A stretch of DNA of 64,000 nt, from assembly GCA_977020255.1 (NCBI GenBank), contig CDROCS010004273.1, positions 1 through 64,000 on the forward strand, written 5' to 3'. This DNA is from Obrimoposthia wandeli (Eukaryota). The position numbers and the translations under genes were made by a program. The notes beneath the pieces are model-generated. The model was not told where the DNA came from. It saw only the letters and a program-made list of their open reading frames with translations, and did no database searches. Within the stretch, counting starts at the first letter, position 1; each line of letters opens with the position of its first letter. Of the stretch, positions 12,319 to 36,010 are shown in pieces.

Positions 12319-15381
<3,063 letters not shown>

Positions 15382-15385
<4 letters not shown>

Positions 15386-15597
15386 CCAAAATCAGCATAC
15401 GTATTAATGGCGAAGGCCTAATCGTCAATGCCCAAAGCTCACTTAGTCAGGCACTTACATTATCGCCTGCAGTAGGCGATGAGAAGGATTTCGTCATCGC
15501 TTTAAATCAAAACTTCATTGCTCGCAGTCAATATGACAGCACGCTATTAAAAGCCGGTGATGACATTGAATTGTTATCTCCCATGGCAGGAGGCTAA
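15382..15597 (+). CDS. thiS: Sulfur carrier protein ThiS
   Basis: [13 protein letters not shown]...[13 protein letters not shown] with C-terminal diglycine. Confidence 0.95.
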
Positions 15598-15599
15598 CC

Positions 15600-16424
15600 T
15601 TGAAGAATATCAATAACAACGCCATTAACGAGAGTATCAAAGAAGGCTTGAACCTCTACGATCAAACATTTAGTTCACGCTTGCTGGTAGGCACAGCCCT
15701 ATACCAATCCCCAAGCATAATGGCGCAAGCGATTGCTGCGTCAGGCAGTGAGATGATCACATTATCATTACGTCGCCAGGACCCTAGTAATAATCAAGGA
15801 CAAACTATCTGGCAGCACATTCAACAAAGCGGCTGCGCCTTATTGCCCAATACGGCCGGTTGTCATAGTGCGCAGGAAGCTATTACTTTGGCACAAATGA
15901 GCCGAGAAATGTTTGCTACCGACTTTATCAAGCTAGAGGTGATAGGCGATGACTACAACCTTCAACCGGACCCTTTTGAGACAGTTAAGGCAGCTGATAT
16001 TCTGATTAAAAAAGGCTTTAAGGTTTTGCCTTACTGCACGGACGACCTAGTATTATGTCAGCGTTTATTGGAAGTTGGCTGCCAGGTATTAATGCCTTGG
16101 GGCTCACCCATAGGTACCGGCAAAGGTTTGATGAATCCTTATAATTTACAAACGATTAGAGATCGCTTTCCAACCACCAGCCTCATCATAGACGCGGGTA
16201 TTGGTAAGCCTTCCCAAGCGATGGCCGCCATGGAAATGGGATTTGATGGCATCTTGCTCAATACCGCCATCGCCAAAGCGCACGACCCAGTACAAATGGC
16301 ACAAGCCTTTGCTCAAGCAGTCAATGGTGGACGCCAAGCTTATTTAGCCGGCCTGATGGAGAGTCGCCAAACCGCGAGCCCATCAACCCCAACTTTAGGG
16401 ACACCCTTTTGGCAACAACAATAG
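15600..16424 (+). CDS. thiG: Thiazole synthase ThiG
   Basis: [51 protein letters not shown]. Confidence 0.97.
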
Positions 16425-17995
16425 TGGCAACAAACGAAGTTTCAGAAGATATGCCTCAACAAAGCACAGCCCAACAAAGTCGACCTATCGTTTGGAGCAT
16501 CGCTGCATCCGATTCTGGAGGCGGCGCGGGTATCCAAGCCGATCTGAATACGATTCATAGCTTGGAGTGTCACGGCTGTACTGTAATTACGGCCATCACT
16601 GCACAAAACAGCGTCTCAGTATCCAAAATACACCCGATATCCGCTGTCGATTTAGCCGCACAATGGCAAGCCCTAGAAAAAGATTTACTCCCTAAGGCAA
16701 TTAAAATTGGCTTATTACCCGAACCGAGTACTCTACGCTGGTTGGCTAGACACCTTAAAGAGCTGCGTCTCACGAACGATTTTTTCTGTGTTTGGGATCC
16801 GGTATTAAAAGCCAGTACGGGAGCTCGTTTTTTAGATGCTTTCGATCGTGGGGAAATCAACCCCTTACTTCAACAAGTAGACCTCATCACGCCCAACTTA
16901 CAAGAAGCAGAGATGCTGACCAAGATTACGATAGAATCGTATTTGGACATAACCCTAGCCGCCAAACAATTACTCGATCGTGGCGTTAAGAATGTGCTTA
17001 TTAAAGGCGGCCATTCTTTTGAGAATAGCGATGTTTGTCGAGACTACTTTGCCAATGAAGAGGGTTCTTTTTGGCTTTCTCATGTTAAGCAAAATCAGCC
17101 AAACAATCACGGCACTGGGTGCACACTCGCCTCAGCGATCGCAAGTTTCGTTGCCCTTCAAAACTCTCTCAGCGACAGTGTCGTTCTTGCCAATCGTTTT
17201 ATCCAGCAGGGGCTGAGACTCGCCGCACCACAAGGCAAAGGCGCAGGGCCCGTTTGGCAAACTCGCCTAGAAAACAACCCAGCTGACCTGTCCGAATTGA
17301 GTAAATCAGCACAGTCCTTCGTAACTCAAGAATCTCCACTGGCTAAAATAGCCTTCGCACAGGAGCTAAACCTCGGTTTATACGCAATCGTCGATAATCT
17401 GATTGATTTAGAACGCTTAAGCCAGCAAGGGATTAATACCCTGCAATGGCGAGATAAGAGAGAAAATAGAGCGGATGAGATTAATGATTGCAAGACGAAC
17501 TTACAAAAGGCGATCAAGCTATGCAAGCAACAAGACATCCGGCTCTATATTAACGACGATTGGCAATTGGCTTTGGAGTTTGGAGCCTACGGCATTCACT
17601 TAGGGCAAGAAGATCTCGAACAGCTACAACCAGAAGACCTCAAACGCATACAGAATCAAGGAATTCGCCTAGGAATCAGTTGTCACAATGAAACTGAATT
17701 AGCGTATGCCCACAGTTTAAAGCCGAGCTATCTAGCCTTTGGCCCTGTTTTCACACCCAATTCGAAAATTGTCGACCACTCTCCAATAGGGTTTACAAAA
17801 CTTAAAGTATGGCAAAGCAGTTATGGCAAAATCTACCCAACCACCTGCATTGGCGGCATAGAGTTAGATAATATGGGTGAAGTCTTGGCAACGGGAATGA
17901 CATCCATCGCGGTTATCTCAGCACTCAGTAATAAAGAGAATAGCTCAGCTTTCATCAAGGCGTTCTCTGAACAAACCTCCAAACAAGTCTCTTAA
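16409..17995 (+). CDS. thiDE: Bifunctional HMP/HMP-P kinase ThiD - thiamine phosphate synthase ThiE fusion
   Basis: [35 protein letters not shown] (ThiD), followed in frame by [33 protein letters not shown] (ThiE). True start may be GTG 16424 or ATG 16451. Confidence 0.92.
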
Positions 17996-19061: not shown

Positions 19062-19091
19062 AGCCGAGTACGTTGCCTAAGTAGCAACGTA

Positions 19092-19547
19092 CTACTTCAT
19101 AACATATTTAACCAATAACCTGTCAAATGCTAGCTTCCCTGGACCATAAAAGAATAAAACCATCATCATCAAACCCCAAATTAAATGATCCTTTTCACCT
19201 GCGAAACTTAGATCAGCGTACGAGATTGCTGCAACAATATTTAAAATAAATAGAGCCACAACATTTAATCGTGTCAGCAAGCCGACAACTAACAAAACAG
19301 GAATCACTAATTCTGCTGCCGTTGCCATCCATGCAGCCAAAACCGACGAAATGAGCGGCACGCTATATTCATATTCGAATAACATCAAGGTCGTATCCCA
19401 AGATTGAATCTTGGTTAGCCCCGACATAAAGAATACCTTTGCCAGCCAAAAGCGCAGAAACAGTAAAAACACCGACTGAGTCATTTCAATTTTATCTAAT
19501 GAAAATTTGGCTACTGAACTAATACTCTTTATGTTAATCATTATCAC
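19092..19547 (-). CDS. DoxX family membrane protein (BufD-like)
   Basis: LRFWLAKVFFMSGLTKI, AAELVIPVLLVVGLLTR, GPGKLAFD. Confidence 0.92.
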   Translation of the reverse strand: MIMINIKSISSVAKFSLDKIEMTQSVFLLFLRFWLAKVFFMSGLTKIQSWDTTLMLFEYEYSVPLISSVLAAWMATAAELVIPVLLVVGLLTRLNVVALFILNIVAAISYADLSFAGEKDHLIWGLMMMVLFFYGPGKLAFDRLLVKYVMK

Positions 19548-19564
19548 GCTCTTTCAATTGTTAT

Positions 19565-20380
19565 TTAAGCATTCACACTAAAACCAACAACCAAAGCCGA
19601 TTGCAAGCTCATCGCTAGTAACTCTGAGACTGACGATTGGAATTCTAGTTCCGCAATTTGTGCAAAAGATTTTTCACTCTCAATCGCCGTAAAAAATTGA
19701 AACTCATCATGGCTTAATTTTGAGATAACCATGTCGAAATTGGTATTACGCCGAACCATCAAATAACCGCCTCCTACATCTAAGTCAACTGAAGCCATTT
19801 CGTCACTGCTCTCTTGATTCACTCGCCAAATTTCATCAACAGGATAAGCAGACGCCATAATTCCAATACTAGGGTCTAGCTTGAAAACAATATTGCCCTG
19901 CTGCTCCTCCTCAACAAATGCGAGGTTTTCAAGAGACTGAGTCTGAGCCCCCATACCACCCGCATTAAAAGCCCGATGCCATAACCATTCTAAACGAGCG
20001 CTATCCGGTAAATACAAAAGGTGCTGTGTAGAATCATGAGAAGCAATAAAATCGACTAAGTAATCACCTAGATGCTCGCCATAGTCCCCTAAATCAGGAG
20101 AGCCCGAAGGGTACTTACGTAAATACCCCGCAACCATATGAGTAAAGAATTGCTCGCCCACCAGCTTCAAGCAAACGGGATAAACTCCCATAAGTGCAGT
20201 TGTTATTCCGCCTAATATACTGCCGCGATAGATAGTTAAGCGATCTTGAGCAGATAGCGCTTCTGAGCCGTTAATATCCACGCAAGCATTATCGACATTA
20301 CCGGCCGTTGGATTAAATATTCCTCGATAAAAGCTTTCTTGCCATACTTTCATCGCTTCTAAATCAGTATTACTGGTCAT
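19565..20380 (-). CDS. DUF2063 / HvfC-BufC family peptide-modification chaperone
   Basis: RLTIYRGS, ALMGVYPVCLKLVGEQFF, YPSGSPDLGDYG, YLPDSARLEW. Overlaps the DUF692 stop by 4 nt. Confidence 0.9.
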   Translation of the reverse strand: MTSNTDLEAMKVWQESFYRGIFNPTAGNVDNACVDINGSEALSAQDRLTIYRGSILGGITTALMGVYPVCLKLVGEQFFTHMVAGYLRKYPSGSPDLGDYGEHLGDYLVDFIASHDSTQHLLYLPDSARLEWLWHRAFNAGGMGAQTQSLENLAFVEEEQQGNIVFKLDPSIGIMASAYPVDEIWRVNQESSDEMASVDLDVGGGYLMVRRNTNFDMVISKLSHDEFQFFTAIESEKSFAQIAELEFQSSVSELLAMSLQSALVVGFSVNA

Positions 20381-21213
20381 GTATAAGCCCGCATTTTCTC
20401 ATCCGCTTTGGCCGCTTCAGCCCTAAGGATTGAAAAATCAGGTACATCGGTATCCCATTCAATTAGAGTAGGGACTGCACCAAAACGCGTTAAGGCCGCA
20501 CAATACAAAGCCCAAACAGGAGGTTTAACCTGATAGCCATGCGTATCAAATAAATAGCCTGGCATTTCTTCATAGCCTGCTAAATGAATCTCTTTGACTT
20601 TATCGATAGGAATGCCGGATAAATATTCATAAGGGTCAAAGCCATGATTGATCGCACTGACGTAAATGTTATTAATGTCTAACAGCAGGTCGCAATCAGT
20701 AGCTTGGCTAATACCCTTAATGAATTCGGCTTCTTCCATATCCGTAGAATGAAAAGTGAGATAAGAAGACGGATTTTCAATGAGTATCTTGCGCCCTAAA
20801 AACTCTTGAACTTGATGTATCCGTTCAATCAAATGTTGCTGCGTTTGTTGAGTGTAAGGCAAAGGGAGTAAATCATGAGTATATTGGCCCGCGACTGAAA
20901 CCCAAGCAATATGGTCAGAAATGTAGGTCGGCTGCAGGCGCTCTGCTAGATTTTTTAAACGTTTTAGATATTCGAAGTTGAGTGGATCAGCACTGCCCAA
21001 AGACATGCCAACACCGTGTAGCGTTATCGGATAATTTTCACGAATTTGCTCTGCGCGCTGAATAGGCAAGCCACCATCAGCCATATAGTTATCGCTTAAT
21101 AATTCAAACCACGGTACATCTGGCTGAGTTTCAAAAACTTCCTGATAATGACTAGACCGCAACCCCAGCCCCGCCCCTTCAATTGATTGAGCAGTAAATG
21201 CACCCGTAGTCAT
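20377..21213 (-). CDS. DUF692 multinuclear non-heme iron oxidative enzyme (MNIO; BufB/HvfB-type)
   Basis: GLGLRSSH, WFELLSDNY, LHGVGMSLGS, SDHIAW, LIENPSSY, LLDINNIYVSAINH, EIHLAG, DTH, LIEWD. Confidence 0.96.
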   Translation of the reverse strand: MTTGAFTAQSIEGAGLGLRSSHYQEVFETQPDVPWFELLSDNYMADGGLPIQRAEQIRENYPITLHGVGMSLGSADPLNFEYLKRLKNLAERLQPTYISDHIAWVSVAGQYTHDLLPLPYTQQTQQHLIERIHQVQEFLGRKILIENPSSYLTFHSTDMEEAEFIKGISQATDCDLLLDINNIYVSAINHGFDPYEYLSGIPIDKVKEIHLAGYEEMPGYLFDTHGYQVKPPVWALYCAALTRFGAVPTLIEWDTDVPDFSILRAEAAKADEKMRAYT

Positions 21214-21243
21214 AGTGATCCTTAGCGATCATGAATTTCGACT

Positions 21244-21284
21244 ATAAAATAGCACTGTTAAGAGAGAACTCAGTGCTATTTTAT
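21244..21284 (-). terminator. Intercistronic stem-loop between precursor and MNIO genes
   Basis: 14-bp perfect IR ATAAAATAGCACTG/CAGTGCTATTTTAT with a 13-nt loop and only a short U tract on the minus strand. Confidence 0.6.
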
Positions 21285-21303
21285 TTTTCACACAGTACTA
21301 AGT

Positions 21304-21570
21304 CTACTTTGCGCCTTTAACTGTACCGCCAACAATCTTGCTGCATGTCCCTTCAGGAACATAAACCCATTCGTCAGCCATAGAATCTGCAGATGCTTGA
21401 CCAGCACAACCATGTTTACTAGTGCCGCAGTCATTCATACCAGACTTAACAATACCCTGGCACTTCTCAAAACCAGGCTTCCCAGCTAATGCTGCAGGTG
21501 ATACCGCTGATAAACCTAAAGCTAGTGCACCGGCAATAGCGCCACTCATGATCGTTTTAGTATTTTTCAT
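21304..21570 (-). CDS. DUF2282 / BufA1-type bufferin RiPP precursor with signal peptide
   Basis: Sec signal ending AALA; EKC.G...NDC....HGCAGQ...[16 protein letters not shown] with four Cys. The GGAG SD favours ATG 21570 over 21582. Confidence 0.92.
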
Positions 21571-21819
21571 TTTCGACTCCATGTATTTGTTTTTGTCGTT
21601 CTAAATATAGCAATAAATTACTTCTTCGCAAGAAAAGGCAAAATGCCTCATATACTTCATTCATAAGTTGGGCACAGCACTCATCATATAGTTCAATTAT
21701 TTATATTTTTATTTCAAACAAGACCGCATTGTCGACATTTATCGCCCAACTTATTACATACTTTATGTCACACTAGAACTATCAAAAAATAGAACCATTA
21801 AGAAAATAGAAGCACCTAG

Positions 21820-23586
21820 ATGAATACAGCAGAAGATGAGACCTGGCACCTACAATCTGATCAGCAGTTTACGCTGGGTCAATCCTCACATAAAGGAGCC
21901 AAAAAACAAAACGAAGATGCTATCGGCATCCGTATTCCTGAGGGAGTAACACAGAGCCACAAAGGCTCTGTCGCCATCATCGCTGATGGTGTGAGTGCTG
22001 CTGAAGCGGGCAAAGAAGCAAGCGAGACTTGCGTCCGTAACTTTCTTTCCGATTATTACTCCACACCCGATACTTGGAGTGTAAAACAAAGCACAACTAA
22101 GGTGCTCACGGCACTGAACCGTTGGTTATATAGCCAAGGCCAGCGCTTTAGCGATGCTCAAAAAGGCTACATCAGCACTTTAAGCTGTATCGTTTTAAAA
22201 TCGAATACCGCTCATATATTTCACGTCGGAGATACCCGTATTTACCGTATGCGTAATGGTGACCTTGAACAACTCACTCGTGACCATACAACCGTAATCA
22301 GCTCCACACAAACCTATCTAGCCCGCGCAATGGGTTTGGATGTAAAACTCGACGTCGATTACCGCAGTACCGATATTGAGCAAGGAGATATTTTCTTTTT
22401 GTCGACCGATGGTATTCATGATTTCATATCGAATCAACAATTGCGCAACCACCTTAAACCCCTCACCCATCTAGAAACTGATAACTTCGAAGAAAGCTGT
22501 GAGCAGCTAATTAATCTAGCGGTGCAACAAAAAAGTAATGACAATCTTAGCTGTCAGATTATTAGAATAGACAAATTACCTAGCCAAAATTTAAATGATG
22601 TACACCAGAGGCTGATCGACCTCCCTTTTCCCCCGGATCTTAATATAGGCATGTCGATTGATGGCTTACGTATAGAGAAAGAGCTTCACGCCAGTAATCG
22701 CAGTCAACTGTATAAAGTTACCGACATAGAATCTGGGGAAATATACTGTATGAAAACCCCCTCTGTGAATTACAACGACGACGCAGCCTATATTGAACGT
22801 TTCATTCTAGAGAGTTGGATTGGAAATCGTATTAGAAACCCACACGTATTGAAAGTCACAGGGTTCAATCGTCCTAAAAATTACCTTTATTATCTAACCG
22901 AATACATTGATGGTATTACGCTGGAGCAGTGGATTAAAGAAAATCCAAACCCTCCTATTCAAGATGCCATCGTCATTATTCAGCAAGTTCTGAAAGGTCT
23001 TCGAGCCTTCCATCGCCGCGAAACAATTCACCAAGACCTAAAGCCCGGCAATATTATGCTGGATATAAATGGCGAAGCAAAAATAATTGATTTTGGATCC
23101 TGCCACGTTAAAGCTATTGCTGAGATAGCGACACCTTTAGAGCGTGACGGGATTTTAGGGACCGCGACCTATGCGGCTCCTGAAGCCGTATTACAGGGCC
23201 AAAGCCTGCAACAAAGTGATATTTTTTCAGTAGCCGTTATTCTATTTGAAATGCTAACGAATAAACTGCCATTCTCGGGTAAATTAGAGTCCTGTCGAAC
23301 CAAAAAAGCCTACTTAAAAACAAAATACATTCCTAGCTATGAACTGAATCCGCTAGTTCCCGTCTGGCTAGATGGGGCGATTAAAAAGGCTTTACGATTT
23401 GAGTCGAATGTTCGACATGGGGATGTATCCGAGTTTCTATATGAAATTGAACACCCTAACCCTAAATATAAGAAAACCTACAATGTGGCGCTATTAAATT
23501 CTAACCCCAGCCTTCCATGGCAGTTACTATCGGGGGGGTTATTTATCGCATTGTGTGTGTCGATTTATCACGATATGAATTCATAG
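21820..23586 (+). CDS. Bifunctional PP2C phosphatase / Ser-Thr protein kinase with C-terminal TM
   Basis: NEDA, IADGVS, HVGDTRIYR, STDG, SNDN (PP2C); CMK, HQDLKPGNI, IIDFG, GTATYAAPE, DIFS (kinase); hydrophobic C-terminus. Confidence 0.93.
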   Translation: MNTAEDETWHLQSDQQFTLGQSSHKGAKKQNEDAIGIRIPEGVTQSHKGSVAIIADGVSAAEAGKEASETCVRNFLSDYYSTPDTWSVKQSTTKVLTALNRWLYSQGQRFSDAQKGYISTLSCIVLKSNTAHIFHVGDTRIYRMRNGDLEQLTRDHTTVISSTQTYLARAMGLDVKLDVDYRSTDIEQGDIFFLSTDGIHDFISNQQLRNHLKPLTHLETDNFEESCEQLINLAVQQKSNDNLSCQIIRIDKLPSQNLNDVHQRLIDLPFPPDLNIGMSIDGLRIEKELHASNRSQLYKVTDIESGEIYCMKTPSVNYNDDAAYIERFILESWIGNRIRNPHVLKVTGFNRPKNYLYYLTEYIDGITLEQWIKENPNPPIQDAIVIIQQVLKGLRAFHRRETIHQDLKPGNIMLDINGEAKIIDFGSCHVKAIAEIATPLERDGILGTATYAAPEAVLQGQSLQQSDIFSVAVILFEMLTNKLPFSGKLESCRTKKAYLKTKYIPSYELNPLVPVWLDGAIKKALRFESNVRHGDVSEFLYEIEHPNPKYKKTYNVALLNSNPSLPWQLLSGGLFIALCVSIYHDMNS

Positions 23587-29857: not shown

Positions 29858-31603
29858 TTATGAAGAACAACTGTAATGCGACACACCACCCGCCTCGAAG
29901 AACTCAAACGGCTTTAGCTTATAAAACTTCTGCTCAATGTCTGCCGATTGTTCATCATAGGGCTGAGTCATAACGTCTTGTAGCTCTCTAACCATAGAAT
30001 ACTCCCACAAGGCCGCTTGCTGATACGCTGGTGCAAGAAACCATTCTCGTAAATTGTATTTTGGATTGACGAGTTTCATCTGTTTAGACAGTTCTTCGCG
30101 AGTCGAAATTGAAGGTTCCTTGGTATCGGTGCCACTCATACGATTAAGCGCTTTCCATTTCCCCAACCAATCAGACCAGCGTTGAACGATCTCTGCGGAA
30201 TCCGCCTTCTGCCGCACATTATTGTAAAAACTTTTTTCGAGTAAACTCATATCGTCAGGTATCCCTGATAACTCACGAAAGAAAATAGTGTAATCAACCT
30301 GCGTTTCCAGCATCAAGGTTTCAAGCTCACTGAACAACTCTAAGTTAAACGAATTAAGACCCAGCTTGGCAGCCCACATTGTTTCCATCTTAGCTTGCAT
30401 TACCTTGGCAAAACCACGGCGAATATCTTCAAGCTTTTTCACAGCGCCTGGATACGCTGACATCAACGGTAATAATGAGGTCCAAAACATGTGGAAATTA
30501 CGCTCCGCTGCAACAGGCTGATTCATGAAAGAGAAATGATGCCCTCCCCCTGTCCAGGGTTGAAATTGTGGATTGTATTCATCACAAAACCCGAAAGGAC
30601 CGTAGTCAAGAGTAAATCCACCCGCCGCACAATTATCACCATTGAAATTACCTTGGCAGTAGCCAACTCGAATCCAGTTCGCCACCAGCGAGGTTAGCCT
30701 TTCACGGAACTCTCGCGCGAGCAAAACGACCTTCTCGGAGATGGTTAAATTTTTGTCGATGACATCACTGTATTCACGCTCGATCAAGTGCAGCACAATC
30801 ATCTCAAGTTCCGCCATCGCTTGCGGATGTTCATTCTTACGGGCACGGCGACTGAATAACTCCAGCTGACCTACCCGAATAAACGAGGGAGCTACACGCG
30901 TAGAAATCGCAACGGCATTAGATACCATCACATCTGGGTCTTTCATATACGACCCTTGCGAGTACCAAGGTCTACTCACCTCCTCAGTTTTCGAAACATA
31001 CAAACTCAGAGATCTCGAAGTTGGCACTCCAAGCGCATGCATATGTTCTTGCGCTAGAAACTCACGAATACTCGACCGCAAGACTGCACGCCCATCAGCG
31101 CCGCGGCAATAAGGTGTACGACCGCCCCCTTTCAGCTGCATTTCCCAGCGTTGTCCATTAATGATCGCTTCAAGCACAGACATAGCACGCCCATCACCAT
31201 AACCGTTGCCAGTTTGAAACGGGCATTGCTGCACGTATTCAGTTCCAAAGATTGAAAGGGCATAACCTGTCGCCCAACCGACCTTGCGCAGCGGCTCAGG
31301 AACAGCGGTAAGATCACCAGAAAACATGCGAATGAAATCCGGCGTCTCTGCCAAACTGTCGGCAAAGCCCAACTCACTGAAAAAGTCTTTGCTGTGTGTT
31401 ATGTACTCTGGGTTTTCAATTGGCGTGGGGCTGACGGGCACATAATGACCTGAAAACACTTGTCTAGGCATATGATCATCACCATTCTCCTTAGAATCTG
31501 GATCACAGCTAAGCGTATCCATAAGGGAGTAGTCTGCTAACTTCGCGAGATCGTCAATCGTCGCTACAGTCGATATAGAATGTTTGGGATGTCGCTGTGT
31601 CAT
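29858..31603 (-). CDS. selO: Protein adenylyltransferase SelO/YdiU family
   Basis: [54 protein letters not shown]-terminal SCSS. Confidence 0.93.
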
Positions 31604-31749
31604 AGGTCGATGTACCAGTTAGTCTGTTCAGCTCATGATTTTATGTCATCGTGCTTTAGATAGCACTTAGAACCTAATCCTGTAGTAAAGTGAAGTATGG
31701 CTTCTTACAACCAGATCACAGAATAACTCAAGCAAGGTAGCGTAATAAC

Positions 31750-32220
31750 ATGCCCGATAAGAAAAAGTTAATTATTATTGCTCATGCCCCCTCTGAAAAT
31801 ACCAGCAGAATGCTACAAGCGGTCATTAAAGGCGCTAACCATCCTGATATTGCCAATGTGGAAGTTCAATACATTGCTCCATTAGATACTCAGGCCAACG
31901 ACATTCTAACCGCACAAGCAGTTATTATTGGGACTACCGAGAATCTTGGTTACATGGCTGGTCTAATTAAAGACGTATTTGATAGGTGTTATTACAATTG
32001 TCTCGACCATACCCAAGGACTGCCTATAGGTTTTTATATTCGTGCAGGCCACGATGGTACCGGAACACGTAAAGCACTTGAAACCATCACCACAGGCTTA
32101 CGCTGGCGATTGGTACAAGAACCTTTAATCTGCAAAGGTGATTTTGATGAAGTATTTATTGAACAGTGCGAAGAATTAGGTTTGGCCATGGCAGCGAGTT
32201 TAGACGCTGGCATTATTTAA
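31750..32220 (+). CDS. Flavodoxin family protein
   Basis: HAPSENT, GTTENLGYMAGLIKDVFDR, RAGHDGTGT. Confidence 0.88.
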   Translation: MPDKKKLIIIAHAPSENTSRMLQAVIKGANHPDIANVEVQYIAPLDTQANDILTAQAVIIGTTENLGYMAGLIKDVFDRCYYNCLDHTQGLPIGFYIRAGHDGTGTRKALETITTGLRWRLVQEPLICKGDFDEVFIEQCEELGLAMAASLDAGII

Positions 32221-32569
32221 AGTCACTAATATTTTCCGAAGAAAAAAGCCGCTAGACTTTATTCGCCATGGCGAAAAGCTCGCTTAGTCGAGCGCCATCT
32301 AGTTACAAGAAGACTTCAATTAAAACAAAAAACTGCACGCTGTTTCAAACTGACAATTAATGTCACAAAATGCCAAAACCCTTTAACAATCATTACTCTA
32401 GCAACCTTTATAGTATTAATGAGGCCTATTCATGCAGCCTTACGCTCAATTAATTATTTGGTATGATTTTTGATAGGTATAAATAGATGTATATCCATTT
32501 GTATATAAATTAGCGACAAGACACCTAGTTCTCAATATTAACTAGAGTAGAAATTAAGAAGGTGCAGTA

Positions 32570-32809
32570 ATGAGTAACAAGCAGAATTCAAACGTCATTC
32601 ATGTTGACTTTAGTTCACGTAAAACACATAAAGTTTGCAATGGTACTCAATCATTTTCTCAATTAATTGGCAATGTTATACCTACCGCGGATGAAGGCTC
32701 TGATGAATGGCCTGAAGACCTCACGCCACGAGAGCGTTGTGACCAGTTGAAACTTGACCTAGAGTTTTTACGCCAGATGAATGATATTCCACCTGTGAAA
32801 AAGTATTAA
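32570..32809 (+). CDS. Small hypothetical protein
   Basis: AGAAGG SD, own terminator and NVIHVDF motif; no family recognised. Confidence 0.6.
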   Translation: MSNKQNSNVIHVDFSSRKTHKVCNGTQSFSQLIGNVIPTADEGSDEWPEDLTPRERCDQLKLDLEFLRQMNDIPPVKKY

Positions 32810-32818
32810 ATAAAAGTC

Positions 32819-32850
32819 AAAAGAAAGCCCGCTATTGCGGGCTTTCTTTT
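32819..32850. terminator. Bidirectional Rho-independent terminator
   Basis: AAAAGAAAGCCCGC-TATT-GCGGGCTTTCTTTT perfect IR between convergent genes. Confidence 0.9.
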
Positions 32851-32855
32851 GTCAC

Positions 32856-33608
32856 TTATGCAGTTCCTTCAGCCCCAGACTCAGCAGAGACCTTTCCCGC
32901 CCTTTCGGCATACTCTTCTTTATTCTCAGAGAAGCGATGGGTTAAAAATTCAGAGTGATCTCGAGTTAAAAGCGTAAAACGAAATAGCTCTTCCATCACA
33001 TCAACCACACGATCACGATAGGAAGAATCCTTCATCGAGCCATCGTCGTTAAACTCTTTCCAAGCCATCGCCACAGACGATTGGTTAGGAATAGTCAGCA
33101 TACGCATCCAACGTCCTAATACACGCAAGCTGTTCACGGCATTAAACGATTGCGAACCACCACTCACCTGCATCACTGCCAGTGTGCGCGCCTGAGTCGG
33201 ACGAACACTGCCTAAACTCAACGGTATCCAGTCAATCTGGTTTTTAATCACAGAAGTAATCGTGCCATGCAGCTCAGGGCTCGACCATACCATCCCTTCT
33301 GACCATATCGCTAATTCATGCAGCTCTTTCACCTTCGGATGATCATAGCTTTCACGATCAAACATGGGTAAATCCGTGGGGTCATAAATTTTAACCTCTG
33401 CACCAAAGCTCTCAAGAATCGCAGCAGCTTCAAACGTAAGCTTTCGGCTATACGATTCTGCACGTAGTGAACCATAAAGCATGAGTATACGCGGCGCATG
33501 AGTTGACCTTGGCTTATCGAAACTGGCTAAGGTCTGTTCTATTGTGTGCTTCGGTGCATAATCAGGCGTATTACCTGATTCTTGCTCCGATACGTGAGAA
33601 TCCGTCAT
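32856..33608 (-). CDS. arsH: NADPH-dependent FMN reductase ArsH
   Basis: [60 protein letters not shown]. Confidence 0.95.
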
Positions 33609-33610
33609 GC

Positions 33611-36010
33611 TTATTTACGCTTCTTAAATGTTGGCTTACCGGCTCTTTTAGCGCCTTCCTGCTTAACGCCCGCCTTTTCGGCGATAGACTTCTGCAGCTT
33701 CTTACCCGGCTTTTTACCCGATGATTTAATACCCGGCTTAGATCCTGGCTTACCGAAGGGCTTCCCAGATGGGCGAGTTCCTGTAGGGCGATTACCTTCA
33801 GACTGACCTTGTCCAGATTTAGCCTGACTTCCTGTACCTGCTCCTGTTCTTGAGCCTGGTTTAGCCGCTTCGCCCTGACCGCCTGGGCGACCACGAGTAC
33901 TTAGACCTGCTTTATTTTGTAGGCGCTTAAAGCGATGCTCTTCGGGCTCGGCATGTGGAATCAAAGCATTCTTGCCTGCACCAATCATGTCTTCGCGACC
34001 CATTTCTTTTAGGGCATCACGCAGCATTGGCCAGCTTTTCGGATCGTGATAACGCAAGAACGCTTTCTGCACACGACGAGATTTCAACTCGGTATGCACA
34101 ACCATCTTCTTCGATTTATAACTGATGCGCTGTAACGGGTTATGACCCGAGTGATACATCGCTGTCGCTAATGACATTGGCGATGGATAGAAGGTCTGCA
34201 CTTGGTCAACGCGGTATTTATTGCGTTTAAGCCAAACGGCTAAGCCCAACATATCTTCATCTTCACAGCCTGGGTGAGCGGCAATGAAGTACGGAATTAG
34301 ATACTGCTTTTTACCGGCTTCTTTCGAGTACTTCTCGAACATATTCTTGAATTTGTCGTACGTTCCCATCCCCGGCTTCATCATCATATCCAAGGTATTC
34401 TTCTCGGTATGCTCAGGGGCAATTTTCAAATAGCCGCCAACGTGATGGGTCACTAGCTCACGAACGTATTCTGGATCTTCTACCGCAAGGTCATAACGTA
34501 AACCGGAAGCAATCGCGATACGCTTAATACCCGGCAAGGCACGGGCACGACGATATAGCGACGTAGTCTGCGAGTGATCGGTAACCAAGTTAGTACAAAT
34601 ACTTGGGAATACACACGATAGACGACGACAGCTGGCGTGGATCTTCGGGTCCTTACAGTTCAGGTGATACATATTGGCCGTTGGCCCACCTAAATCTGAA
34701 ATCGCGCCAGTAAAACCGGGAGCATGATCACGAATATCTTCAATTTCTTTAAGCACTGATTCTTGGCTACGGCTTTGAATCACACGGCCTTCGTGCTCGG
34801 TAATCGAACAGAAGCTACAACCACCAAAGCAACCGCGCATGATATTGACCGAAAAACGAATCATATCGTAAGCAGGAATTTTGGCATCGCCATAAGAAGG
34901 ATGCGCAATACGCTTGTACGGCAACGCAAATACCGCATCCATTTCTTCGGTCTCGAGAGGAATCGGTGGTGAGTTAACCCAAACTTCTTTATCACCATGG
35001 CGTTGAATCAAGGCATGGGCGTTTTGCGGATTACTTTCTAGGTGCAAAATTCTTGATGCGTGGGCGTATAACGCCGAGTCAGCACGGACTTTTTCGAACG
35101 AAGGCAAACGAATCACAGCGGTCGCGTGATCAATATTCAGCTTTCTGTGCAATGGCATCGGTACGATTTTGACCACACTTTCGTGCTCTTCCATATCGCC
35201 TTCAGAGCCATCCTTATTCGTCGAACATGTCTGGTTCTTGGTATCCTTCATTTCATAAGGATTTGGAATTTCATCCAAGCGACCAGGCCAATCGATGCGC
35301 GTTGAGTCAATTTCTGTCCAGCCAGCAGGCGTTGCGTCACGAATAACAGCAGTGCCTCGCACATACTGAATTTCTTTCATTGTTTTGCCCGCAGCAAGCT
35401 TATGGCTCACCTCAACAATGGCGCGTTCAGCGTTACCGTATAATAGGATATCGGCGCCTGAGTCGATTAATACCGAGCGACGAATTTCATCACTCCAATA
35501 ATCGTATTGCGCAATACGGCGTAAGCTAGCTTCAATACCACCAATCATCAGGGGAACGTCTTTATACGCTTGCTTACATTTTTGACTATATACAATTACC
35601 GCACGATCAGGACGTTTACCCGATACACCATGAGGCGTATAGGCATCATCGTTTCGAACTTTAAGGTCGGCGGTGTATTTATTAATCAGGGAATCCATGT
35701 TGCCTGCACTAACAGCAAAATACAGATTCGGCTTACCCAATGCTTTAAATGCGTCTAGGTCATTCCAATCAGGCTGACAAATAAGCCCTACACGGAAGCC
35801 TTGGGATTCTAGTAAACGGCCCATGATCGCCATACCGAAACTTGGGTGATCGACGTAAGCATCACCACAGACAATAATAATGTCGCAAGAATCCCAGCCA
35901 AGCGCGTCCATTTCAGCTCGTGACATTGGCAAAAACGGCGCCGTGCCGTAGCACTCTGCCCAATATCTTGGGTACGAGAAAAGTTCAGGGGCTGGAATTA
36001 CACTTAACAT
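33611..36010 (-). CDS. ygiQ: YgiQ family radical SAM protein
   Basis: [55 protein letters not shown]; long basic low-complexity tail. Confidence 0.96.

What the first reader, a model, noticed from the sequence alone, without database searches (positions are those of the whole stretch)
19092..21570. Intact bufferin-type RiPP cluster (DUF2282 precursor - MNIO DUF692 - DUF2063 - DoxX) in a marine gammaproteobacterium
Seen: four co-oriented genes. The exported precursor carries four Cys (EKC, NDC, HGC, GTC), followed by a full MNIO motif set, a DUF2063 partner and a DoxX membrane protein. Established: in Caulobacter BufA1/B/C/D the MNIO converts the two central Cys to 5-thiooxazoles, giving a periplasmic copper-binding peptide, and the outer Cys form a disulfide. 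Inference: this strain makes a copper-buffering modified peptide of about 59 aa (GKPGFEKC...GAK). Unlike the characterised locus, no ECF sigma/anti-sigma pair is adjacent, so its regulation and the product in this lineage appear uncharacterised. This is the strongest specialised-metabolism signal in the window.
Basis: partly seen in the sequence, partly recalled or inferred. Interest (0 to 1): 0.75.

Follow-up and report, generated by a model that had tools for sequence, protein, structure and literature searches.

The report
Ordinary bufferin copper-peptide operon in Oleispira
This is an intact four-gene operon of the already described bufferin family, in which an iron enzyme most likely turns two cysteines of a small exported peptide into copper-binding rings; it is a clean but ordinary example in a marine oil-degrading genus.

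Summary
Four co-oriented minus-strand genes at 19092-21570 encode:
- a DUF2282 precursor (29-aa Sec-type signal plus 59-aa core, Cys at core positions 8/19/26/47);
- a BufB-type MNIO (NCBIfam equivalog above its cut-off, with all nine positions that align to the MbnB Fe ligands present);
- a DUF2063 partner whose confident model matches the MNIO partners TglI and NGO1945;
- a DoxX membrane protein.

The closest relatives are Oleispira genomes, which carry the operon in the same chromosomal slot. All four genes are under purifying selection.

The interpretation as a Buf1-type bufferin (captophorin) is supported, but the locus is an ordinary member of a family with thousands of described clusters. 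The missing adjacent ECF sigma/anti-sigma pair is the majority state: 34 of 40 related DUF2282 loci also lack one.

- A stable hairpin follows the precursor gene here and in the seven relatives folded, with unrelated sequences, so it is probably an attenuator.
- DoxX is absent from the same site in four other Oleispira-type genomes.
- Many more distant relatives carry an ECF-type promoter motif without an adjacent sigma gene.

Chemistry, copper binding and regulation remain untested here. The scan had already noted bufferin-type operons on other DNA (s1-241123, s1-241192, s1-232413).

The parts
21304..21570 (-). bufA: DUF2282 (Buf1-type) precursor of 88 aa. The signal peptide is coded by 21484-21570 and the 59-aa core by 21307-21483, with Cys at core positions 8, 19, 26 and 47.
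   Evidence: PF10048 E 2e-21. GGAG ribosome-binding site before the ATG at 21570, and relatives start at the same Met. The four Cys are invariant in relatives. Hydrophobic N-terminal segment followed by an Ala-x-Ala site. dN/dS 0.016 against L127.
21244..21284 (-). Hairpin in the 90-nt bufA-bufB spacer: a perfect 14-bp stem whose 3' arm runs into a U-rich stretch. It is a candidate partial terminator (attenuator).
   Evidence: MFE -24 kcal/mol, z -3.0, and none of 200 shuffles fold as well. The seven relatives folded (L001-L006, L008) also have a strong hairpin at the same place, with unrelated sequence.
20377..21213 (-). bufB: MNIO (DUF692) maturase, 278 aa.
   Evidence: NF050167 MNIO_BufB 370.7 bits, above the 310 cut-off. 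PF05114 E 2e-105. H66, H101, E146, D179, N182, H210, D223 and H225 align to the MbnB Fe ligands; E252 is inferred from the conserved Glu in the 3BWW alignment. All nine are invariant in 81 sequences.
19565..20380 (-). bufC: DUF2063 partner protein, 271 aa. Its start overlaps the bufB stop by 4 nt (ATGA).
   Evidence: PF09836 covers residues 13-108. The AlphaFold model has mean pLDDT 92.5. The best structural matches are TglI of the TglHI complex (8hi7_A) and NGO1945 (3DEE), each at probability 1.00. The ATGA overlap is seen.
19092..19541 (-). bufD: DoxX-family membrane protein of 149 aa counted from the ATG at 19541 (the longest ORF starts at the GTG at 19547).
   Evidence: PF07681 E 6e-16 and an HvfX-family hit. 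Hydrophobic segments. The L001 orthologue starts at the equivalent ATG. dN/dS 0.074.
19067..19095 (-). Hairpin overlapping the bufD stop codon, between the convergent bufD and enoyl-CoA hydratase genes. It is a possible operon terminator but has no clear U tract.
   Evidence: MFE -24.5 kcal/mol, z -4.8, and none of 200 shuffles fold as well.
21604..21631 (-). Candidate sigma-70-type promoter (TTGCGA, 16 nt, TATATT, with TG before the second hexamer).
   Evidence: Consensus scan, which found fewer promoter-like sites in the region than in shuffles. The site is conserved in L001 and L127 but not in L002 or L003. Consensus match only; not shown to be active.
21661..21696 (-). Upstream block conserved in all Oleispira-type loci. 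It begins with TTGAAC (21691-21696) and is a candidate -35 element or operator.
   Evidence: Alignment of the upstream regions of the window, L001-L004, L081, L082 and L127. The GAAC box resembles the -35 part of the ECF-type motif found in more distant relatives, but the -10 part differs.

Best explanation
This is a Buf1-type bufferin (captophorin) operon, bufABCD, of an Oleispira-like marine gammaproteobacterium. The proposed mechanism is inferred by homology. In the cytoplasm, the iron enzyme BufB, working with its partner BufC, oxidises the two central cysteines of the 88-aa precursor (core Cys19 and Cys26) by four electrons each, giving 5-thiooxazole rings. The Sec machinery then exports the peptide and signal peptidase removes a 29-aa signal. 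Core Cys8 and Cys47 form a disulfide that staples a small beta-sheet fold. The resulting 59-aa periplasmic peptide binds one copper ion through the two heterocycles and buffers excess copper. DoxX (BufD) is an accessory membrane protein that is not needed for the modification. A hairpin just after bufA probably stops part of the transcripts, so precursor mRNA would exceed enzyme mRNA. Shown here: gene content, intact motifs, fold of BufC, synteny and purifying selection. Inferred: the chemistry, export, copper binding and attenuation.
For: Domain assignments come, and the BufB equivalog model scores above its curated cut-off. All nine positions aligned to or inferred from the MbnB Fe ligands are present and invariant in 81 relatives. 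The four Cys and the surrounding family motifs are invariant in relatives, including loci from Cupriavidus and from a Caulobacteraceae genome that carries sigF-nrsF. Cys spacing is 11/7/21 here against 11/8/21 in Caulobacter BufA1. The BufA model, at moderate confidence, shows a two-stranded sheet that includes CysI and a short helix after CysIV, as described for BufA1. The BufC model (pLDDT 92.5) matches the MNIO partners TglI and NGO1945. The genes are tightly packed, with an ATGA overlap between bufB and bufC. The operon is syntenic in eight Oleispira-type loci. dN/dS is 0.016-0.16 for all four genes. A marine metatranscriptome holds a 166-nt contig identical to part of bufB. Published experiments on homologues show 5-thiooxazoles, 1:1 copper binding, a requirement for BufB and BufC, and that DoxX is dispensable (PMC11626156; PMC13097082).
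Against: Nothing at this locus has been tested biochemically. The nearest characterised precursor-type relative in my set is only about 35-42% identical. No copper-homeostasis gene or metal regulator lies near the operon among the neighbours I scanned. The metal specificity of bufferins outside Caulobacter is open: homologous operons respond to gold, cadmium or chromium, or are under virulence control (PMC11626156; PMC3511200). The metatranscriptome contig could derive from contaminating DNA. The attenuator role of the hairpin rests on structure prediction only.
Confidence: 0.85

Rival explanations
1. The peptide is made as described, but in this organism its physiological role is not copper detoxification. 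It might handle another metal, protect against oxidative, chlorine or sulfur stress together with DoxX, or scavenge scarce copper in seawater as a chalkophore would.
For: Homologous operons are induced by gold, cadmium and chromium, or are under virulence regulators (PMC11626156; PMC3511200). The authors themselves suggest that DoxX points to other stresses (PMC12452194). No copper gene lies beside the operon here. DUF2282-DoxX pairs without an MNIO gene exist in metagenomes.
Against: In the one system tested in depth, the peptide was selective for copper among mixed metals and protected against copper. The related captophorins tested so far also bind copper (PMC12538549).
Confidence: 0.15
2. 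The MNIO installs oxazolone-thioamide pairs, as in methanobactin, rather than 5-thiooxazoles.
For: The two structures are isomers that are hard to tell apart, and related products were first reported as oxazolone-thioamides (PMC11252979 and PMC13097082).
Against: Later work reassigns DUF2063-dependent MNIO products to 5-thiooxazoles. The evidence includes alkylation-assisted NMR, the 305-nm absorbance, and a preprint on selective labelling of bufferins. The MbnB model scores far below its cut-off here (71 against 325 bits).
Confidence: 0.05
3. The cluster is a silent or decaying relic with no current function.
For: The accessory gene bufD has been lost at this site in four related genomes. Expression evidence is limited to one short metatranscriptome contig. 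The Microbulbifer homologue was not detected as expressed in the laboratory.
Against: All reading frames, catalytic residues and cysteines are intact. dN/dS is 0.016-0.16 across the operon. Synteny is kept across species that have diverged to saturation at synonymous sites.
Confidence: 0.03

Closest known systems
Caulobacter vibrioides buf1ABCD (CCNA_03363-03366), bufferin 1
   Same: Same four gene families in the same order. The precursor has a Sec signal and four conserved Cys with the EKC, NDC, CAG and GTC contexts. The MNIO belongs to the BufB subfamily, and DoxX is the last gene.
   Different: There is no adjacent sigF-nrsF pair. The core is 59 aa rather than 68 aa. The CysII-CysIII spacing is 7 rather than 8, and a His sits two residues before CysIII. 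Precursor identity to a Caulobacteraceae orthologue is only about 35%.
Cupriavidus gig (gold-induced genes) operon; represented here by the Cupriavidus sp. locus L058
   Same: Same four-gene layout and the same 7-residue CysII-CysIII spacing, with a His before CysIII.
   Different: The Cupriavidus locus has a divergently transcribed ECF sigma gene and a long insertion after the signal peptide. Precursor identity is about 42%.
Oxazolin/HvfABC, fontiphorin and bulbicupramide (EGKCG-repeat captophorins)
   Same: An MNIO plus DUF2063 pair, often with DoxX; 5-thiooxazole chemistry; copper binding.
   Different: Those precursors carry EGKCG repeats and are not DUF2282 proteins. The HvfB, HvfC and HvfX models score below their cut-offs here.
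Methanobactin MbnABC
   Same: The same enzyme superfamily and the same Fe-ligand set; both modify cysteine to give a copper-binding heterocycle.
   Different: The MbnB model scores 71 against a cut-off of 325 bits. The partner is a DUF2063 protein, not MbnC. The precursor is exported by Sec and is not cleaved from a leader peptide. The product chemistry differs.

Membership tests
Buf1-type bufferin cluster (captophorin class) | Precursor of the DUF2282 family (PF10048) | tested here: met
   75.9 bits, E 2e-21, against a cut-off of 22.4.
Buf1-type bufferin cluster (captophorin class) | N-terminal Sec signal peptide on the precursor | tested here: met
   Lys-rich start, a hydrophobic stretch at residues 6-30, and an Ala-x-Ala site conserved in relatives. 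No dedicated signal-peptide predictor was available, so this is a feature-based call.
Buf1-type bufferin cluster (captophorin class) | Four conserved Cys (CysI-IV) in the family motif | tested here: met
   Cys37, Cys48, Cys55 and Cys76 of the 88-aa protein are invariant in 19 aligned relatives. Spacing is 11/7/21.
Buf1-type bufferin cluster (captophorin class) | Adjacent MNIO of the BufB subfamily with an intact iron site | tested here: met
   NF050167 scores 370.7 bits, above the 310 cut-off. All nine ligand positions are present.
Buf1-type bufferin cluster (captophorin class) | DUF2063 partner protein with a C-terminal peptide-recognition (RRE-like) domain | tested here: met
   PF09836 matches the N-terminal domain. 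The full-length model (pLDDT 92.5) matches TglI and NGO1945, and matches MbnC and an RRE protein only weakly.
Buf1-type bufferin cluster (captophorin class) | DoxX gene (frequent, not obligatory) | tested here: met
   PF07681 E 6e-16. The gene is absent in four sister genomes.
Buf1-type bufferin cluster (captophorin class) | 5-thiooxazoles at CysII and CysIII and a CysI-CysIV disulfide in the mature peptide | not testable with these tools
   Needs mass spectrometry, UV and NMR on the expressed peptide.
Buf1-type bufferin cluster (captophorin class) | Copper binding and protection from copper stress | not testable with these tools
   Needs binding assays and a mutant phenotype.
SigF/NrsF-regulated buf1 locus (Caulobacter type) | Adjacent ECF sigma and NrsF anti-sigma genes | tested here: not met
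   No tblastn hit in the whole window with two sigma queries and two anti-sigma queries. The same holds for 34 of 40 related DUF2282 loci.
Buf2 bufferins (6/12 Cys) | Six or twelve conserved Cys and a match to the BufA2 model | tested here: not met
   Only four Cys. NF050166 scores 21.9 bits against a cut-off of 60.
Oxazolin/Hvf type | EGKCG-repeat precursor and an HvfB-type MNIO | tested here: not met
   No such repeats in the precursor. NF003818 scores 243 bits against a cut-off of 360.
Methanobactin Mbn | MbnB equivalog, MbnC partner and MbnA precursor | tested here: not met
   TIGR04159 scores 71 bits against a cut-off of 325. The partner is a DUF2063 protein.

The most novel reading that the evidence does not exclude
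In Oleispira-type genomes the buf1 operon has a regulatory design not yet described for bufferins. A conserved post-precursor attenuator hairpin would set the ratio of precursor to enzyme. Control would come from a factor encoded elsewhere, acting on the conserved block that begins with TTGAAC. That block keeps the -35 part of the ECF-type motif seen in more distant relatives but has a different downstream element. DoxX would be a facultative add-on that is gained or lost within the genus.
Probability: 0.3. Interest if true: 0.3.

Novelty: new member of a known kind. Interest (0 to 1): 0.15.

Why it matters
It matters little beyond annotation. The locus adds a cold-adapted, hydrocarbon-degrading marine genus to the hosts of bufferins and gives a compact 59-aa core to test. 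Two side results could help people who study the family. First, presence or absence of DoxX among close relatives is a natural test of what that gene contributes. Second, the hairpin after the precursor gene, and the ECF-type promoter motif in relatives that lack a linked sigma gene, bear on how these operons are regulated outside Caulobacter.

Tried and rejected
- Functional link between the divergent PP2C-phosphatase/Ser-Thr-kinase gene and the operon. Outside the Oleispira-type loci, only 2 of 76 related genome loci have any kinase hit within 6 kb, so I read it as lineage synteny.
- Caulobacter-type control. No sigF or nrsF homologue lies in the window. The published sigma-F site (GTAACC, 16 nt, CGAA) has only a loose look-alike at about 21730-21757, with three mismatches and a 17-nt spacer. 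It is conserved in L001 and L127 but deleted in L002, L004 and L082, so I do not put it forward.
- An 11-nt perfect inverted repeat (21663-21673 and 21744-21754). It is only partly conserved in L001 and absent in the other relatives, so I did not pursue it.
- Sequence searches of the PDB with the precursor and with BufC found nothing useful. A fold search with the moderate-confidence BufA model gave no significant match.
Folding was used instead.
- The large representative protein search and the word-based homologue search were not used, because the family scans left nothing open.
Full report
**What is there.** Window 19092-21582 holds four co-oriented minus-strand ORFs of 92 (88 from the better start), 278, 271 and 151 (149) codons.
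- Pfam assigns them to DUF2282, the MNIO family (MbnB_TglH_ChrH), DUF2063 and DoxX.
- NCBIfam places the enzyme in the BufB equivalog: 370.7 bits against a cut-off of 310. The HvfB, ApyH, MbnB and ChrH models all fall below their cut-offs.
- The flanking genes are unrelated. On one side lie an enoyl-CoA hydratase and apparent thiamine genes; on the other lie a divergent PP2C-phosphatase/Ser-Thr-kinase fusion and RlmJ.
- No metal-related gene was found in the ten ORFs scanned between 24.5 and 36 kb, apart from an ArsH.

**Gene starts and packing.**
A GGAG lies 6 nt upstream and overlaps the earlier ATG at 21582, and all close relatives begin at the equivalent Met-Lys.
- DoxX probably starts at the ATG at 19541.
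- bufB and bufC overlap by ATGA. bufC and bufD are 23 nt apart. bufA and bufB are 90 nt apart.

**Precursor.**
- The 88-aa protein has a Lys-rich N-terminus, a hydrophobic stretch and an Ala-x-Ala site. Cleavage there leaves a 59-aa core with Cys at positions 8, 19, 26 and 47.
- In an alignment of 19 relatives, the invariant positions are the four Cys and the residues that flank them (Glu-Lys before CysI, Asn two residues before CysII, Gly two residues after CysIII, Gly two residues before CysIV). The set includes a Cupriavidus locus and a Caulobacteraceae locus that carries sigF-nrsF.
- Caulobacter BufA1 has its Cys at core positions 12, 23, 31 and 52. The CysI-II and CysIII-IV spacings are therefore identical, and the central loop here is one residue shorter, as in Cupriavidus.
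- The AlphaFold model is only moderately confident (pLDDT 60). It shows the two-stranded sheet that includes CysI and a short helix after CysIV, as reported for BufA1.

**Enzyme and partner.**
- I mapped the HMMER alignment to MbnB (7TCR) onto the published ligand list. His66, His101, Glu146, Asp179, Asn182, His210, Asp223 and His225 align to the MbnB iron ligands.
- The alignment to MbnB ends before its last ligand, Glu239. Glu252 is therefore inferred from the conserved Glu in the 3BWW alignment.
- All nine positions are invariant in 81 aligned MNIOs.
- Pfam recognises only the N-terminal domain of BufC. A model built on 25 sequences is confident throughout (pLDDT 92.5). Its best structural matches are TglI from the TglHI holoenzyme and NGO1945 (3DEE), the DUF2063 reference structure, with MbnC and an RRE protein further down the list.

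**Origin, conservation and selection.**
- The best genome matches are Oleispira MAGs (MNIO 78-90% identical; taxonomy). A metagenome contig, L127, carries a 99% identical precursor.
- In eight Oleispira-type loci the operon occupies the same slot, between the kinase gene and the hydratase gene.
- Against L127, dN/dS is 0.016 (bufA), 0.075 (bufB), 0.160 (bufC) and 0.074 (bufD). All four genes are under purifying selection; the precursor is the most constrained and BufC the least.
- bufD is present in the window, L001 and L127. It is missing at the same site in L002, L003/L081, L004 and L082, with at most a 21-residue trace in L002. This fits the experimental finding that DoxX is not needed for modification or for copper protection in Caulobacter.

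**Regulation.**
- No SigF- or NrsF-like gene is in the 64-kb window. Only 6 of 40 related loci with a DUF2282 precursor have a sigma gene within 6 kb.
- A sigma-70-like site lies at 21604-21631. A block that begins with TTGAAC (21661-21696) is conserved in all Oleispira-type loci.
- In more distant relatives, 20 of 69 non-redundant upstream regions carry an ECF-type two-box motif: a GAAC- or GTAA-type -35 box, 14-18 nt, then a GTCT-type -10 box. It lies 70-167 nt before the start codon. Dinucleotide shuffles gave a mean of 1.4 regions with the motif (maximum 6), and the opposite strand gave 5. Only one of the 20 has a sigma-like gene within the flank.
- I chose that pattern after looking at these same sequences, so the enrichment is biased upwards. 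It still suggests control by an unlinked ECF sigma in many marine relatives.
- The Oleispira block keeps the -35-like box but not the -10 box. Regulation here stays open.

**Hairpin after the precursor gene.**
- A perfect 14-bp stem (21244-21284) running into a U-rich stretch lies between bufA and bufB (z -3.0).
- The seven relatives folded (L001-L006, L008) have an equally strong hairpin at the same place, with unrelated sequence and mostly followed by U runs.
- Conservation of structure but not of sequence points to a partial terminator that would raise precursor transcripts above enzyme transcripts. That is an inference.
- The two main bufferin papers do not mention terminators or stem-loops.

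**Expression.** A marine metatranscriptome contains a 166-nt contig identical to 20937-21098, inside bufB. It also holds a second contig from a relative that covers the bufA start. The data are contigs only, and DNA carry-over cannot be excluded.

**Comparison with what is known.**
- Bufferins were defined in 2024. The MNIO and the DUF2063 protein convert CysII and CysIII of a Sec-exported DUF2282 peptide to 5-thiooxazoles. CysI and CysIV form a disulfide. The peptide binds one copper ion with very high affinity and protects against copper (PMC11626156).
- Surveys describe thousands of such clusters with bufA, bufB, bufC and doxX as the core (PMC12452194). These are grouped with the EGKCG-type peptides into the captophorin class (PMC13097082). 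A marine gammaproteobacterial example of the EGKCG type has been characterised (PMC12538549).
- No paper in the library links Oleispira to this family.
- The scan's earlier notes list other bufferin-type operons on other DNA, one of them already judged ordinary.

**Verdict.** This is an intact, selected, uncharacterised member of a well-described family, so interest is low. The chemistry, the metal specificity and the regulator remain to be shown by experiment.

Noticed in passing
L092, L097, L098, L100, L103, L110, L114, L117, L119-L121, L123, L124 (e.g. L100:2501-3413): In 13 of 47 metagenome loci, a DUF2282 precursor gene is followed directly by a DoxX gene, with no MNIO or DUF2063 gene in the 2.5 kb downstream. 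In L100 the next gene is a PdxH-type pyridoxamine-phosphate oxidase. This hints at a precursor-DoxX link that does not depend on the maturase.
   Followed up: partly
Upstream regions of bufA in L007, L088, L092, L094, L096-L098, L100, L105, L107-L111, L114, L116, L118-L120, L122: An ECF-type promoter-like motif (a GAAC- or GTAA-type -35 box, 14-18 nt, a GTCT-type -10 box) lies 70-167 nt before the precursor start in 20 of 69 non-redundant relatives. Shuffles gave a mean of 1.4. Nearly all of these loci lack a sigma gene within the flank. The pattern was chosen after the fact.
   Followed up: partly
window 21820-23586 (+): A 588-aa fusion of a PP2C phosphatase domain and a Ser/Thr kinase domain is transcribed divergently from bufA. 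Its position is conserved in all Oleispira-type loci (88-94% identity) but not in other relatives of the operon.
   Followed up: partly
window 19565-20380 compared with L127, L001, L002, L081, L082: BufC diverges much faster than its neighbours: 79% identity to L127, against 92-100% for the other genes. It is still under purifying selection (dN/dS about 0.16).
   Followed up: yes
window 21781-21813: In the DNA-type runs X2 and X3, very short contigs (31-40 nt, 2 mismatches) pile up to a depth near 2,000 on this AT-rich stretch with 16-nt direct repeats, between the kinase gene and bufA. The neighbouring depth is about 6. These are probably matches to abundant low-complexity words elsewhere in the sample.
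   Followed up: no
window 29858-36010 (-): SelO/YdiU-family protein adenylyltransferase (29858-31603), ArsH (32856-33608) and a YgiQ-family radical SAM protein (33611-36010). These are ordinary annotations and appear unrelated to the operon.
   Followed up: no
window 14243-17995 (+): By their translations, these genes look like a thiamine operon (thiO-, thiS- and thiG-like genes and a fused thiD/thiE). This was not checked with family scans.
   Followed up: no
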